A DNA stretch of 63,193 nt, counting the filler, from Hausera hauseri (Eukaryota): NCBI GenBank assembly GCA_046269625.1. It is 12 parts of 12 records of this genome, joined end to end, with 100 filler letters (N's around TTAATTAATTAA, not from the genome) between each part and the next. Parts side by side here need not be neighbours in the genome. Positions count along the whole stretch, not along the records: positions 26,822 to 32,112 come from JBJURY010288613.1; positions 32,213 to 40,231 come from JBJURY010818752.1; 10 more parts are not named here. One strand, 5' to 3'. The stretch's first letter is position 1. The number at the start of each line of letters is the position of its first letter. The position numbers were made by a program, and so were the translations under genes. Below the pieces are notes generated by a model. The model worked only from the letters and a program-made list of their open reading frames with translations. It was not told the origin of the DNA and did not search any database. Of this stretch, positions 26,822 to 32,399 are shown one piece after another.

Positions 26822-26898
26822 CCAGTATTGCGTCGAAATACGCGTCCCATTCCGGTTCATTTCCGACATCTGGAAGTCCAGCACCTACCAAAGCTACG
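26822..26898. repeat. 77-bp terminal direct repeat (identical to 32036-32112)
   Basis: CCAGTATTGCGTCG...CCAAAGCTACG is the first and last 77 nt of the contig. This is the typical k-mer overlap of a circular assembly path. Confidence 0.97.
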
Positions 26899-29399
26899 CT
26901 CGTTTTTGCACATTTTCTCGAATTTCTTTCAACCTGGGCTGTATTTCCTTCATCTGCGTAGTCCGGAAACCTACTCCATTTCCACAAGCATATTGAATCA
27001 TTTTCACTAAGTCGCCGAATTCATTGGAATCAATGAGTCTTTTTGGTGATAATCCGTTAATTCGATAATTACATCCTTTTGCCATATTCGTACAAATTCT
27101 CGCTTATTTTTGATTTCTGATTCGGTAAAAGCATATTTGTTTCGGTAGACTTCGAATTCTTTTGTTAGTTCATCTAGCCTCGTTGCTCTTTGCTCTGTTT
27201 TGATGCACGTTTCTTCGACTTGCTGTAATTTTGGCATCAGCTGTCTCATCCACTCGTCATTAATCTCCGCCATTTCTACCAAAAAGTAGGCTAACCCGTA
27301 CATTTCATTTATAATTTTTGAGTTGGGATCTATGGCATCTGACAATTTCTTTACAAACTTAGATTTCTGAAAACTAATATGCTGATCATTTCATATTTTT
27401 ATCAATTTGGTATGGAAATTCTGATTTGATCCGGCCATCCATTCTTGTGGTTTATGCAAAAATCTTATTACATCTATTAACGTAGTTCCGTGTTCCGGAC
27501 AAATGTCTAGGGTCTCAATATCTTGAATTGAGATCTCTTCGATAGGTTTTTCTGTCAGACGTTGAACTCCTTCTAGTCGGACGTTTCTTAATTTTGGATA
27601 GAAATTGCATTTCATATTCCGTTTTTCCGTAAAGTTCGTTTCTTCAATCATTTTATAAATTTTTTCTAATAGCGTTGCTTTTTGCTTCTTTTTCATAAAA
27701 TTAAGTCGCCTTAATGCTTCAAATCTCGTTCGGATGTATATTTCGGCTAGTATCGCCTCTAAATTTTGTGCGCTTTCTTCTAATTGTCTCTTTACAGATG
27801 GCTGGCTTCCTGGAAATTTTTTCTTTCGGTCTTCTACTATTTTGCTCAATCTCATTACTAGTTCGGACCATTTCGATAACTGATTGACAATTATTGGTTT
27901 AGCCATTATAGCCTTATCTAGCATTTTGTATGCGTCCTTCAATTCGTCATCATAATCCCGCTGATATATCTAAATTCGTCTTTATATTCATCGAATTCTA
28001 AGATGCATGCTGTTACTACGTATTTAGTTTCTTCATTATTTTGAGACATAATTCGATTTCTCAGACTATAAATCTGTACTCGCTTTTCATTTTCTATTTT
28101 GATCCGATTTTCCAAGCTCGTGTATTGTTTAGGTACAGCAAATGCGATTTTTATCATTTCCATTAAAGGAAAAATATCTATTGGGTCTATATCCAATATT
28201 TCTAAATCGATATTACTTCGGTTGTTGACTGATTTTTTCTAAGTTGGTTAATTATCGTGTAGCGAATGTCATCCACCATATGCTCTAAATTGTGGACTAC
28301 TCTCTTCCGTTTTGGATTCGCTTCCAACGCTGATAACAACGTTTGCGCTTTAGTGACTTTTACGTCGACACTGTCTTCATTCTTATTCCATTCTTCCAAA
28401 AACTCGACTCCACTTTTAATCCATGAATCTAGTTCATGTTTCCATTTTAACAATGTTTCTGCTGATACCCCTTCAGGTTGTCTTGCGTCGATTGCTTCAG
28501 CAAACTTTCCTTCGCTACGTAGTTTCAAACTTTTATATAACTTCTCGGCGAATTGTTGTTCTTTCCCGGATATGTCTACTTGTTCGCTGATCTCCTTGAG
28601 CCTTTCTAAATTTTGTTGTAATATTTCGGGCTCTAGACACTTAATTCGCATTTTCTTTAGCTCATCGGCGTTCTTCCATGAACGTCGAATTTTCCATTTT
28701 TTTGGATCAAAATCGTCAGTATTTTCCATTTCTTCCTCACTAATAGGAAGTAGACAGATCTCGTTAATCTCATTAGCTGATCCTATGGACTCGGCGGTTC
28801 CGACAGGCGTGATTGATCCGATTTCTGGTTTATTCACATTATGTCCTATGTCATCTATAACGATGTTCGGACTACTTGTTCCTTTAATTTTCTCTTTAGT
28901 TATTTGTGAACGTGAGCAACTTCTACGTTTCGTCTTAAATGAAGGGCTACGGCCTCTATTTTTCGTAATTATAAGTATTAATGGTTCCATAAATTCCCGT
29001 TCTGCAGTATCGTCCTCAACATACTTATCTACTTTTTCAACCGTGAACTCAGGCGCTACGTCTAAGTCGACTTCCGTCGATGGGCCTGGTTTATCCGATG
29101 GTTTATTATTCGTGGGAACATTCTTTTTCCGTGTCATGTCGCTTCGTTTTGGTGCTATTGCCTGCTCAGAGTCAGTTTATGGTTCTACAAAACCATGATA
29201 TACTTCTAGTAGTATTAGTTTATCTCTGTACTCTTTTCTAGCTGTCAATATTTGTGGATTACAAAATTCAGGCTGAGCGTCTAGAAACTTCCGTAAATCT
29301 TGTATATCGATAATAGTGCCTGTATCTCCACTAACACCATACTTCTCATCTAAATTTTCATTAGTTCTGATCATACTAGTATCTATTGGCTCAGTAAAT

Positions 29400-30449
29400 G
29401 AAACTCTACGTGGGTTTGGACATGATCTTGAAATGTGTCCTTCTTTCCGCAAGTGAAACAAAATGAGTTCCCGTTTCTACCGACTCTCTGTCGACCGTCT
29501 TCGTTTACCGGCGATTTAGATCTATTTGTACTCTTATTATACTAGGTTGCCGCACTGTCAGCGTTTCGTCGATTATCACTATTTCGGCTATCGCCGTTTT
29601 GATTCGAGTAGTTTGAGCCTCTATAATTTCCTATATTCCCATCGCAGTTAAAATCTGGTCGGTTCGTACTAGTAAAATTATTGCCTCGGCTATACCTATA
29701 ACTGTCGTTATTATTTCGGTTCCCATAATTTTTGTTATTCGTATATCGTCTATCATCTCTTCCATGATTATCATTCCGATTTATGTCCGTGCGATCACTT
29801 CGATCATTATTTCTGTCGATTCTATCATTATGTTTGGCATATCTGTGAAGTGCCATTTCTAAGTCTTGAGCTAACCGTAGAGTCCCTTCAAAGTTTTCCG
29901 GCCTAGCCAAAATTAATTGCTTAAGCAAATCTCGTGACCAAATACCATGGATTAATTAAGTCGTCATCATGACATCTAGATCTGGCGGTGTTGCCTTTTC
30001 TGCGGCATCGCGTTCCGCATCTGTTTTCGCTCTAGCTACGTTGGCTATACGCAGTGTGTTTATATAACTATTGGCAAGTTTCTTCAACGCAAATGCGAAT
30101 TGCGTTACTGATTCACCTTTTGTTGTACTCTATTCTGAAATGCCATAAGCTTTTGTTGCGGCGTTACTGTCGGTAATAATTTACGGTTTAATGCTCCTAC
30201 CAGAGAGGACCAAGATTTCTTCTCGTCATTAGTAAGTTTGCTATATGCGTCAGCAGCTAGATTTTTCAAATATAACGACAAGGGTTTAATCATTACTTCA
30301 GGAGTAAGGCTAGCACCTTCTGCGTGCAATTTGCAAGTTCTCAAGAATTCATTAAGCCCGTCTGGGTCTCCATCATATGCCGGCAAGTTTAAAGAATCGA
30401 AGGTGAAGATGTCTAGTTTCTGCGCTACTGGTTGGTTGTCTGCTGCCAT
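29400..30449 (-). pseudogene. Retrotransposon Gag (capsid-like region, N/D/R-rich linker, CCHC zinc knuckle)
   Basis: LPAYDGDPDGLNEFLRTC...YLKNLAADAYSKL...WSSLVGALNRKL...FQNRVQ. The knuckle CFTCG(K)EGHISRSC is split by a 1-nt frameshift near 29445. Confidence 0.85.
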
Positions 30450-30788
30450 GTTAATTACGTTATTTGTTGCTAAATCTACTTAATTTATTTTATGTACCTC
30501 AAGTGGAATTTTAAACTGTTTATTTTGCGCGACAACGTCTAGTTTGATTCTATTCTCGGAATTTGAAAGTTTATCTACTTTTTGTGTATCTCTATAAATA
30601 TTTCGACGTGTCTCACGTATAGGTGAATTGTCTTTTAATATATGGTTTACTTTTGACTTACCAATGCTTGTTCTCTATTAGAGTATGCGTTACTTATCCC
30701 CCTATTTGATTTTATTTTTGAAATATATCAATTTAATTGGTGTGTAATTATTTAGCTCTTAAAAGTAAAGTCTAGCGAGGTACATACT

Positions 30789-30805
30789 TCCTGCTAGGGT
30801 CGCCA
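30789..30805 (-). promoter_or_regulatory. tRNA primer-binding site (tRNA-Arg-like)
   Basis: TGGCGACCCTAGCAGGA starts 2 nt after ...TATATAACA. Its complement ...TCCTGCTAGGGTCG-CCA looks like a tRNA acceptor/T-stem end. Confidence 0.8.
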
Positions 30806-30807
30806 AA

Positions 30808-30852
30808 TGTTATATATTGGGGTGGCCCTTATTCAACGCCCACTATATAACA
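30808..30852 (-). repeat. 45-bp mini-LTR candidate with 14-bp imperfect terminal inverted repeats
   Basis: Minus strand TGTTATATAGTGGGCGTTGAATAAGGGCCACCCCAATATATAACA. The ends match at 13/14 positions as inverted repeats. Confidence 0.7.
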
Positions 30853-32399
30853 GAATTACACTCAAGATTATTTCAATTCTTATGCAGTTCGGTCTATCGT
30901 AATCGAATAGACTGAATGTACCTTACCGATTTTAATTATTATGCAGGTAATGCGTGCGGTCCTGTGCTGATAATTGAAATGTGCTAAGCTTATAGCTCTA
31001 TTGATTTCGTTCTCTCGATTAGGGTTTATTTTGACAGCTAAGTATAGTAATACTTTCCTTAGTTCTTCATTTGTGTTTTCTACCATGATTTTATCGATTA
31101 CTGCTTCGTCAGTTAAGCTGCTTTTTGATCATTTAAAACGTGAACTTCTTATCAATCTAGCTGCTTCGAAAATTATCTTTTCTTTCTCATCCAGTATATC
31201 ACCTCGAAGGCTTGAATAATTTACAATTCGTACCAAGTTCTTCAATAACTCGTTTAACTCTTCATTATCTGTGCTAAAGATCGGAATTGACATTTGTTTC
31301 AATTCTCTAATCAATTCTACGTTATAATCTACTTCTCACGTTTTCCTAGGCCGACCAACTGGACGTTTCGGCCTTGGCCCTTTTGTTGCTATTTCGCTCA
31401 ACGGTACTAAATTGATGTCATATTTTTCCTTATCCTCGTCTGTTTGCAAATACGCAAAATACAAGGCAGCATTTCGGACTCCCATAATTTGTCCTACGCA
31501 TTGTTCTGCTTTAACTTTGCGTGTGGCTTCTTCTTTCGTCTGTTCATTTGCTATCGTTACTACTACTGGGTTTGTTTCGCCTGGAATAATCCCGACGTCT
31601 ATCAATTGCTCTAAGTCGTTGAGTATTCTACCTCTAAAATAGAATCTGTAATTTAACTCGTTTTTCCCGCCGTTGTTTATCAGCCATTCTCTTACATTTC
31701 TTACGTAAGAATATTTAGTTAACACTCATTCTTTTTCGTCCATCCATTCGGATGATACCATCATTTTTATCGTCATTTCAGGTTTAGCCCTCAAGATTTT
31801 AGCATACTTTCTTATTAAAAGTTTCGGCACCGTGCTATAAATCGTATTCTCACTAGACAATATAGTCAAAGTTGTTATAAGTTGTCGTAACTTATTTCAG
31901 TAATATTTACGTTAATTAGTTCAATTAAATCTTTTTCAGTTAGTGCTGAATTCAGGAGCATCGCCACATCGAATCTCCTGTTCTGTGGGCACATTTCTAT
32001 CTCATTTATTTGTACTGGAGTCATGGGCTTTTCGGCCAGTATTGCGTCGAAATACGCGTCCCATTCCGGTTCATTTCCGACATCTGGAAGTCCAGCACCT
32101 ACCAAAGCTACGNNNNNNNNNNNNNNNNNNNNNNNNNNNNNNNNNNNNNNNNNNNNTTAATTAATTAANNNNNNNNNNNNNNNNNNNNNNNNNNNNNNNN
32201 NNNNNNNNNNNNATAACAAATCGAGAAAAAACCTTTTCATATATTCCTCAGAGTTGTAAATTTTTTAAAAAATTATCAAAGATTAAACCCAAAGGAAAAT
32301 TAAAATGTTGGTTTAAAACTAAGAAAAATCAATTTAAATCTCTTACTATTCGATTGAGTATCAAAACTTTCACAGAAGGACAAAGTTGTGATTCTGTAT

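What the first reader, a model, noticed from the sequence alone, without database searches (positions are those of the whole stretch)
26822..32112. Pol-less retroelement-like unit: gag fused to ~1,100 codons of unknown protein in place of pol
Seen: starting from the PBS (30805), the minus strand gives gag (30449), a CCHC knuckle (~29440), then ORF pieces from 29137 to 26822. These wrap through the 77-bp overlap to 32112 and run on to 30880, ending 28 nt before the mini-LTR. The pieces are joined by in-frame stops (29177, 31336, 31129) or single frameshifts. The ancestral unit was therefore probably one ORF of about 1,590 codons filling almost all of 5.2 kb. No RT, RNase H or integrase motif is visible. 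Established: gag-only non-autonomous elements (plant TR-GAG) and flatworm TRIM-like elements exist. I know of none with a large, novel, helical-looking cargo fused to Gag. Inference: this is a family mobilised in trans that packages its own accessory protein into particles. It is the best candidate here for an undescribed system.
Basis: partly seen in the sequence, partly recalled or inferred. Interest (0 to 1): 0.9.

Follow-up and report, generated by a model that had tools for sequence, protein, structure and literature searches.

The report
Decayed pol-less gag retroelement with orphan ORF
This 5.2-kb circularly assembled repeat is a decayed retrotransposon-like unit that keeps a capsid (gag) gene and a tRNA primer site. 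Where the reverse transcriptase and integrase genes should be, it carries about 1,170 codons of coding sequence with no detectable relative anywhere, an unusual but still unproven kind of parasitic mobile element.

Summary
The piece is a 5,214-bp unit closed by an exact 77-bp overlap. Its minus strand carries one decayed reading frame of about 1,593 codons, with 13 breaks against about 64 in shuffles. The first ~423 codons are Ty3/gypsy-type Gag. The best PDB hit is the Drosophila Arc2 capsid N-lobe, language-model neighbours are all gag families, and there is one CCHC knuckle, itself split by a frame change. An 18-nt tRNA-type primer-binding site lies 2 nt after a 45-nt TG...CA palindrome. 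The remaining ~1,170 codons show coding periodicity throughout. They have no protease, RT, RNase H or integrase signal in Pfam, and no relative among 1.84 billion representative proteins. Weak leads suggest an NLS, a ubiquitin-like fold and an AT-hook.

The 45-nt "mini-LTR" is doubtful. It is shorter than any published LTR, has no adjacent polypurine tract, and is shorter than the 77-nt assembly overlap. That implies a longer LTR overlapping the ORF end, tandem units or circles.

No other copy could be reached.

The parts
26822..26898 (.). First copy of the exact 77-nt terminal overlap; it is identical to 32036-32112 and lies inside the cargo ORF
   Evidence: D1, 100% identity, spacing 5214
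32036..32112 (.). Second copy of the 77-nt overlap, which closes the 5,214-bp unit
30808..30852 (-). It has 14-nt inverted arms and a 17-nt centre and contains TATATAG, AATAAG and TATATAA. It could be a whole minimal LTR or only the 3' end (U5) of a longer one
   Evidence: I7; 1/60 random sequences; fold not exceptional, z 0.32
30788..30805 (-). PBS-like 18-mer, 2 nt after ...ACA. Its complement reads as a tRNA 3' end: 2 nt of T-loop, a 5-nt T-stem, a 7-nt acceptor strand, discriminator G and CCA
   Evidence: sequence; the tRNA layout is my reading and the host tRNA was not available
30450..30787 (-). Untranslated leader with stops in all frames and no codon periodicity
29177..30449 (-). Gag-like region of 423 codons, from the ATG at 30449 to the TAA at 29179-29177. 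It holds a capsid N-lobe-like part (30449-30108), a GESVTQF...LKKLA motif piece, an N/R/D-rich linker and a CCHC knuckle. It is broken by 2 in-frame stops and 2 frame changes
   Evidence: dArc2 N-lobe best PDB hit, E 0.28; gag-clan neighbours, 0.87-0.93
29420..29460 (-). CX2CX4HX4C zinc knuckle, split by a frame change between Cys2 and His
   Evidence: (zf-CCHC E 0.13 on the C-terminal half alone)
26899..29176 (-). Cargo ORF, first part (pieces of 324, 99, 192 and 127 aa and the start of the 119-aa piece). It is coding by periodicity and has no family and no homologue
30880..32112 (-). Cargo ORF, second part after the wrap (rest of the 119-aa piece, then pieces of 56, 129, 68 and 82 aa), ending at the TAA at 30882-30880, 27 nt before the 45-nt unit
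   Evidence: (tail periodicity p = 1e-5)
28298..28315 (-). PKRKRV, a classical NLS-like basic cluster
   Evidence: sequence; the function is inferred
31549..31776 (-). Possible ubiquitin-like (beta-grasp) domain that spans the in-frame TGA at 31728-31726
   Evidence: Pfam ubiquitin E 0.069, profile 20-64 of 72; low-confidence model with beta-alpha-beta-beta-3/10-beta order; ubiquitin/UBL chains dominate the non-significant top hits. These signals are weak and not independent
31339..31371 (-). PKRPVGRPRKT, an AT-hook-like motif with a GRP core and basic flanks
   Evidence: sequence; Pfam did not report it

Best explanation
The piece is a decayed copy, or a collapsed assembly of copies, of a non-autonomous element derived from a Ty3/gypsy-type LTR retrotransposon. 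It keeps the cis signals and the structural gene needed to be copied by someone else's enzymes: a ...CA LTR end, an 18-nt tRNA primer-binding site, a leader, and Gag with a capsid N-lobe and one CCHC nucleocapsid knuckle.

Where protease, RT, RNase H and integrase would lie, it has about 1,170 codons of an unrelated protein. That sequence stayed open, and so was presumably selected, until recently. The protein is largely helical and probably nuclear and DNA-binding: it has a PKRKRV cluster, a possible ubiquitin-like fold and an AT-hook-like motif.

Inferred life cycle: transcription of the whole unit; translation of Gag, plus the second protein by read-through of the gag TAA or from its own ATG; packaging of the RNA by Gag; tRNA-primed reverse transcription and integration by the RT and IN of an autonomous partner.

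What is shown: the anatomy, the coding nature of the cargo, and the absence of pol and of homologues. What is inferred: mobility, the partner, the way the cargo is expressed and its role. The circular assembly means one of three things. The real LTR may be at least about 77 nt and overlap the ORF end. The units may sit head to tail. Or circular DNA forms may exist.
For: The unit is circular at 5,214 bp. One decayed frame of 1,593 codons has 13 breaks against 64 in shuffles. Coding periodicity is present in all pieces and absent from the leader. For Gag, the best PDB hit of the 124-aa N piece is the Drosophila Arc2 capsid N-lobe, colinear over 76 residues, E 0.28. ESM-Atlas recognition is 2948 and the named neighbours are DUF7041, DUF4939, Retrotrans_gag (12 hits) and Ty3_capsid, with all ten best in one clan. 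The CCHC knuckle lies downstream of a disordered linker. The TG...CA palindrome and the 18-nt TGG... PBS stand in the canonical order LTR end, 2 nt, PBS, leader, gag. No pol domain appears at Pfam E up to 10 on any piece or at E up to 0.1 on the plus-strand ORFs. There is no internal duplication. The cargo is an orphan: 0 hits in 1.84e9 representatives for the 324-aa piece; 0 hits for the 192-aa and 129-aa pieces; no usable Atlas hit; and nothing in PDB, PHROGs or NCBIfam. A-richness of the sense strand (39% A) is uniform through gag and cargo. Pol-less LTR families that keep gag are documented and can transpose (PMC8704663, PMC12067270).
Against: Only one copy is available and it is broken 13 times. 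There are no flanks, no second LTR copy, no TSD, and no partner with pol. Each single Gag signal is below significance (E 0.28; Pfam finds no gag family; zf-CCHC E 0.13). No polypurine tract abuts the 45-nt unit. The PBS could not be matched to a host tRNA. The circle could also reflect a tandem array that never moved as an element. The domain leads in the cargo are weak, and both AlphaFold models have pLDDT 40-45.
Confidence: 0.6

Rival explanations
1. The unit is a tandem repeat (a satellite-like array with a 5.2-kb monomer) or an abundant extrachromosomal circle that descends from a retroelement. The closed circle then reflects real head-to-tail junctions, and the 45-nt palindrome is simply the junction or spacer. 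The sequence is no longer, or never was, a dispersed mobile family. This overlaps in part with the best explanation, since tandem LTR-int-LTR-int arrays do arise from LTR elements.
For: The contig runs uninterrupted from the ORF tail through the 45-nt unit into the PBS and closes on itself with a 77-nt overlap. If k was 77, 77-mers spanning tail, 45 nt and PBS must exist in the reads, and dispersed insertions with a 45-nt LTR cannot supply them (inference). No PPT lies next to the 45-nt unit. The copy is decayed.
Against: A longer LTR that overlaps the ORF end explains the closure equally well. The PBS and the ...CA end stand in canonical register. The whole ORF was kept open until recently, which is easier to explain for an element that replicates through its products than for a satellite.
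Confidence: 0.2
2. The cargo is not new. It is a known retroelement or host gene (pol, env, another accessory ORF, or a captured host gene) that has diverged or decayed beyond what these searches can detect, or whose relatives exist only in the unsampled host lineage.
For: The cargo (about 1,170 codons) and the whole unit (5.2 kb) are the size of an ordinary gag-pol element. A GDTGT motif lies 29 codons after the knuckle (29329-29315). The host's own proteins are evidently not in the protein collections, so lineage-restricted relatives would be missed.
Against: RT, RNase H and integrase are among the easiest domains to detect, and pieces of 99-324 aa with few breaks give nothing even at E up to 10. 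The GDTGT motif has no protease context. There is no hydrophobic segment for an env. phmmer against 1.84e9 representatives gives zero hits.
Confidence: 0.08
3. The circle is an assembly chimera. A de Bruijn cycle joined a gag-bearing repeat to unrelated repeated coding sequence through shared k-mers, so gag and cargo are not contiguous in any molecule.
For: Repeats are the usual source of false cycles.
Against: The frame continues across the gag-cargo border, with only a TAA between two long open stretches in the same frame. Base composition, strand skew and codon periodicity are uniform round the whole circle. No internal repeat of k-mer length other than the terminal overlap exists.
Confidence: 0.06
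4. The piece is a pseudogene of a host gene that fused a domesticated Gag to a large nuclear protein. The PBS-like and TG...CA features are then chance or relics.
For: Domesticated gag genes are common (PMC10516033, title and abstract as listed). The cargo has NLS-like and AT-hook-like motifs typical of host chromatin proteins.
Against: The sequence is intronless and circularly assembled, hence multi-copy. The PBS and LTR-end signals are intact and stand 356 nt upstream of the ATG. It is decayed rather than conserved.
Confidence: 0.05

Closest known systems
TR-GAG elements of plants (terminal-repeat retrotransposons with a GAG domain)
   Same: These are LTR-type non-autonomous elements that keep gag and the cis signals and lack pol. 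One was shown to transpose using a partner's enzymes (PMC8704663).
   Different: TR-GAGs have a single ORF that encodes only GAG. Here about 73% of the coding length is a second, unrelated protein. TR-GAGs are plant Copia/Gypsy derivatives, whereas this Gag's nearest neighbours are animal and fungal Ty3/gypsy-type gag families. The two LTRs of this unit were not seen.
BHIKHARI-1/2 (zebrafish) and ENS-1/ERNI (chicken) non-autonomous endogenous retroviruses
   Same: These are animal LTR elements that encode gag but neither pol nor env, and they were recently mobile (PMC12067270).
   Different: They are vertebrate retroviral lineages and Gag is their only protein. They have no large extra ORF. 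ENS-1 has a known pol-bearing partner (ENS-3), and no partner is known here.
Orphan accessory proteins of autonomous LTR retrotransposons: Cer1 CERV (C. elegans) and the ORF3s of bdelloid rotifer elements
   Same: These are lineage-specific proteins with no or unexpected homology, carried beside gag. CERV is nuclear and acts on the element's genomic RNA (PMC10309623). The rotifer ORF3s show that LTR elements capture extra genes as modules (PMC5408684).
   Different: Those elements keep pol and add the extra gene to it. Here the extra coding sequence stands in place of pol and is several times longer.
LARD and TRIM/SMART non-autonomous LTR elements
   Same: They lack pol and depend on a partner. 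The SMART family shows that very short LTRs can work.
   Different: Their internal regions are non-coding. The shortest LTRs I found reported are 76-90 bp (PMC3281118), against 45 nt for the unit proposed here.

Membership tests
LTR retrotransposon (Ty3/gypsy-like, Metaviridae) | Two long terminal direct repeats flanking the internal region | not testable with these tools
   A circularly collapsed contig shows the repeat only once. There are no flanks, and other copies were unreachable.
LTR retrotransposon (Ty3/gypsy-like, Metaviridae) | TG...CA termini with short inverted repeats | tested here: inconclusive
   The ...ACA end 2 nt before the PBS is clear. TGTTATATAGTGGG / CCCAATATATAACA arms bound a 45-nt unit. 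The true 5' boundary is unknown, and another candidate lies at 31724.
LTR retrotransposon (Ty3/gypsy-like, Metaviridae) | Primer-binding site complementary to a host tRNA 3' end, next to the 5' LTR | tested here: inconclusive
   The 18-mer at 30805-30788 has the layout CCA, discriminator, 7-nt acceptor strand, 5-nt T-stem and 2 nt. No host tRNA was available to match it. From memory, the TGGCGACC start resembles tRNA-Arg-type sites.
LTR retrotransposon (Ty3/gypsy-like, Metaviridae) | Polypurine tract directly upstream of the 3' LTR | tested here: not met
   The 15 nt before the 45-nt unit hold 6 purines. The best PPT-like site (13/15) precedes a TGTTA at 31724, inside coding sequence.
LTR retrotransposon (Ty3/gypsy-like, Metaviridae) | Gag with a capsid fold and CCHC nucleocapsid | tested here: met
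   The dArc2 capsid N-lobe is the best PDB hit (E 0.28, colinear). Atlas neighbours all belong to the gag clan. A CX2CX4HX4C knuckle is present, broken by a frame change. No single test is significant on its own, and Pfam gag models do not fire on the fragments.
LTR retrotransposon (Ty3/gypsy-like, Metaviridae) | Pol: aspartic protease, reverse transcriptase, RNase H, integrase | tested here: not met
   No such Pfam family appears at E up to 10 on any minus-strand piece or at E up to 0.1 on the plus-strand ORFs. There is no YxDD and no HHCC. The single DTG lacks protease context.
TR-GAG / gag-only non-autonomous LTR element | Gag is the only protein encoded | tested here: not met
   About 1,170 further codons with coding periodicity follow gag.
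LARD | Long non-coding internal domain | tested here: not met
   The internal region is about 92% ORF-like with codon periodicity.
Ubiquitin-like (beta-grasp) domain, in the cargo | Significant match to a ubiquitin-family profile or fold | tested here: inconclusive
   Pfam ubiquitin E 0.069, below the cut-off. There was no PDB sequence hit. The model has pLDDT 44.6 with the right order of elements. Foldseek top hits are mostly ubiquitin/UBL but at E about 1.
AT-hook | GRP core flanked by Arg/Lys/Pro | tested here: inconclusive
   PKRPVGRPRKT is present, but Pfam reported no AT_hook match. A single motif can arise by chance.

The most novel reading that the evidence does not exclude
This would be a family of LTR retroelements that has exchanged pol for a large lineage-specific nuclear protein (NLS, helical region, ubiquitin-like fold, AT-hook). 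The protein is made as a Gag read-through fusion, so that particles built by Gag carry it. The element would borrow RT and integrase from a partner and bring its own chromatin-targeting or silencing-evasion factor. That would be a natural Gag-mediated protein delivery system.
Probability: 0.1. Interest if true: 0.8.

Novelty: new variant of a known kind. Interest (0 to 1): 0.5.

Why it matters
Pol-less LTR elements described so far keep nothing (TRIM, LARD) or only gag (TR-GAG, BHIKHARI, ENS-1). An element that discards pol yet maintains more than 1,100 codons of another protein would show that non-autonomous retroelements can invest in functions of their own beyond the capsid. It would also supply a new, sizeable orphan protein whose likely nuclear and DNA-binding character can be tested. 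If the protein is joined to Gag, it would be a natural example of capsid-linked protein cargo, which bears on Gag-based delivery tools. If instead the unit proves to be a tandem array or a one-off chimera, it is an ordinary decayed repeat.

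Tried and rejected
**Searches that found nothing**
- Homologues of the cargo: phmmer of the 324-aa piece against 1.84e9 representatives gave 0 hits. 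Word-indexed searches of the 192-aa and 129-aa cargo pieces gave 0 hits, as did the search of the 124-aa gag N piece.
- ESM Atlas on the 324-aa piece gave no usable hit.
- An exact look-up of five ORFs found none in the collection.
- IMG/VR protein scans with three pieces and with the PBS pattern found nothing.
- JGI metagenomes gave nothing by protein or by the LTR-end plus PBS pattern.
- GTDB genomes gave nothing by pattern.
- Rfam and tRNA scans of the piece found nothing.
- PHROGs and NCBIfam gave only noise.
- A full-text search for the PBS string returned one unrelated paper.

**Analyses that could not be used**
- AlphaFold without an alignment gave unusable models: pLDDT 40.3 for the 324-aa piece and 44.6 for the 129-aa piece. 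Fold searches on them are not evidence.
- All-against-all BLASTP of the pieces showed no internal duplication and no second gag-like domain.

**Readings I rejected**
- Stop-codon reassignment or programmed frameshifting as the cause of the breaks. All three stop codons occur in frame, and two frame changes fall inside conserved Gag motifs (the Q..GESV motif and the knuckle).
- Introns. The pieces abut or overlap.
- Env. There is no hydrophobic segment.
- The 310-aa plus-strand ORF at 28266-29198 as a gene. It is opposite the longest open stretch, has no family, and the plus strand needs 35 breaks.
- The 917-bp LTR starting at 31724 as the preferred model. It has the best PPT-like site, but the stretch is coding in frame with what precedes it, and the putative ubiquitin-like fold spans the boundary.

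- The search of earlier findings, the look-up of sequencing runs and the look-up of encoding contigs. Read laying could not be used because no run ids were available.
- A read-through translation with X at the breaks could not be handed to the search or fold tools, because it has no reference. Pieces were searched separately.

Full report
**What is there**

The piece 26822-32112 ends in two exact copies of the same 77 nt. It therefore represents a closed unit of 5,214 bp. On the minus strand nearly the whole unit is covered by long stop-free stretches that follow one another directly or overlap by a few codons.

A dynamic-programming path from the ATG at 30449 to the TAA at 30882-30880, passing through the wrap, needs 13 breaks over 1,593 codons. 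Seven are in-frame stops and six are frame changes. Shuffled sequence needs 64 on average and never fewer than 54. The opposite strand needs 35.

Every piece shows the same codon-position bias, with G about 0.3 at position 1 and about 0.15 at positions 2 and 3. This includes the last 843 nt (p = 1e-5). The 328-nt leader shows no such bias in any frame. The pieces leave no room for introns. All three stop codons occur in frame, and two frame changes fall inside conserved motifs. This is therefore decay of one long reading frame, not recoding.

**The retroelement part**

The order on the minus strand is:
- a 45-nt unit beginning TGT and ending ACA, with 14-nt inverted arms (30852-30808);
- two T;
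- an 18-mer beginning TGG (30805-30788);
- a 338-nt leader;
- the ATG.

The inverted repeat is the only close one in the unit, and one of comparable quality arises in 1 of 60 random sequences. Its predicted fold is not unusually stable.

The complement of the 18-mer has the layout of a tRNA 3' end: CCA, discriminator G, a seven-base acceptor strand, a five-base T-stem and two loop bases. Eighteen bases is the canonical length of a retroviral PBS. This is my reading of the sequence. The host tRNA set was not available, so the match is untested.

The first 124-aa piece gives the capsid N-lobe of Drosophila Arc2, a domesticated Ty3/gypsy Gag, as its best hit in the whole PDB. The alignment is colinear over 76 residues, at E 0.28. 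The language-model search recognises the 114-aa ORF (recognition 2948). Among clusters that carry a Pfam family it returns only gag-type families: DUF7041, DUF4939, Retrotrans_gag and Ty3_capsid, at 0.87-0.93.

The next pieces carry the Q..GESV.QF...LKKLA motif, which I recall as typical of Retrotrans_gag. They also carry an N/R/D-rich linker and a CX2CX4HX4C knuckle at 29460-29420, split by a frame change. Pfam's gag models do not fire on the fragments, so each signal alone is weak. Their agreement and canonical order make a Ty3/gypsy-type Gag the clear reading.

**What replaces pol**

After an in-frame TAA (29179-29177), about 1,170 more codons follow.

No protease, RT, RNase H, integrase or env family appears in Pfam on any piece at E up to 10. 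The plus-strand ORFs give none at E up to 0.1. There is no YxDD or HHCC motif, and the single DTG lacks protease context.

The 324-aa piece has no hit at E 0.001 among 1.84 billion representative proteins. The 192-aa and 129-aa pieces find nothing either. PDB, PHROGs, NCBIfam and the Atlas also give nothing. The pieces are not repeats of one another or of gag. Composition and strand skew are the same as in gag.

By eye the cargo contains:
- an acidic and basic, probably disordered start;
- a helical region (secondary structure only, from a low-confidence model);
- PKRKRV at 28315-28298;
- a stretch at 31776-31549 that fits a ubiquitin-like beta-grasp;
- PKRPVGRPRKT at 31371-31339, which looks like an AT-hook.

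The evidence for the ubiquitin-like fold is Pfam ubiquitin at E 0.069, the matching order of predicted elements, and ubiquitin and UBL chains crowding the non-significant Foldseek list. These are leads, not findings. Together they suggest a nuclear, DNA-associated protein.

**The 'mini-LTR'**

- The shortest LTRs I could find in print are 76-90 bp (PMC3281118).
- No polypurine tract abuts the 45-nt unit. The best PPT-like site precedes a TGTTA at 31724, but the 917 nt from there on are coding in frame with what precedes.
- A 77-nt terminal overlap is what a k = 77 graph assembler leaves on a cycle. This is an inference about the assembler. Such a cycle can close only if 77-mers that run from the ORF tail through the 45 nt into the PBS exist in the reads. 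Dispersed insertions with a 45-nt LTR would not provide them.

So one of three things holds. The LTR may be at least about 77 nt and begin inside the ORF's last codons, with the palindrome as its U5 end next to the PBS. The units may lie head to tail. Or circular forms may be present. The data here cannot choose among these.

**Most likely mechanism**

I read the unit as a decayed member of a non-autonomous Ty3/gypsy-derived family (confidence 0.6). It would supply its own Gag and cis signals and depend on a partner's RT and integrase, as shown for TR-GAG in Arabidopsis (PMC8704663) and inferred for BHIKHARI and ENS-1 in vertebrates (PMC12067270). The extra protein may be made by read-through of the gag stop or from its own ATG at 29137. 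Either way, it would be an accessory factor in the sense of Cer1's CERV (PMC10309623) or the captured ORF3s of rotifer elements (PMC5408684). Here, however, it stands in place of pol rather than beside it.

The anatomy, the coding nature of the cargo, and the absence of pol and of homologues are shown. Mobility, the partner, the mode of expression and the function are inferred.

**Rivals**
- A tandem array or circle that is not a mobile family (0.2; this overlaps in part with the best explanation).
- A known gene diverged beyond detection (0.08).
- An assembly chimera (0.06).
- A pseudogene of a host gag-fusion gene (0.05).

**Limits**

Public viral, metagenome and prokaryote collections hold nothing related.

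Breaks are described only by position. A read-through with X at the breaks has no reference, so it was not sent to any search or fold tool.

**Verdict**

This is a new variant of a known kind: a pol-less LTR-type element that keeps gag and adds a large orphan ORF. It is of moderate interest (0.5) until genomic copies show whether an intact, dispersed family exists.

Noticed in passing
window 28266-29198 (+): A 310-aa ATG ORF lies antisense to the longest open stretch of the cargo. It is rich in Ser/Phe/Leu, as expected opposite an A-rich coding strand, and has no Pfam family. It is most likely a shadow ORF.
   Followed up: partly
window 26899-32112 (whole unit, minus strand): The sense strand is 39% A and only 16% C. 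CpG is not depleted (observed/expected 1.31), which suggests a host or element without CpG methylation.
   Followed up: partly
window 29830-29545 (-): Between the capsid-like part and the knuckle lies a low-complexity linker of about 95 residues, built almost entirely of Asn, Arg, Asp, Gly, Ser and Tyr (DR/NR/RN repeats).
   Followed up: no
window 29329-29315 (-): A GDTGT motif lies 29 codons after the knuckle, where a retropepsin active site would be expected. It lacks the hydrophobic context and the downstream protease motifs, and there is no Pfam protease hit. It may be a relic or chance.
   Followed up: partly
window, the six frame changes (30129-30108, 29476-29386, 28238-28205, 27969-27942, 27020-27010, 31896-31878): Five of the six frame changes go in the same direction (-1/+2). 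All four in-frame stops in the second half of the ORF are TGA, while the three in the first half are TAA or TAG. I have no explanation for this. It may be chance.
   Followed up: no
window 30852-30808 (-): The 45-nt unit contains two TATA-like boxes (TATATAG, TATATAA) and an AATAAG. If it were a complete LTR, the repeated R region could be only about 5-15 nt long.
   Followed up: no
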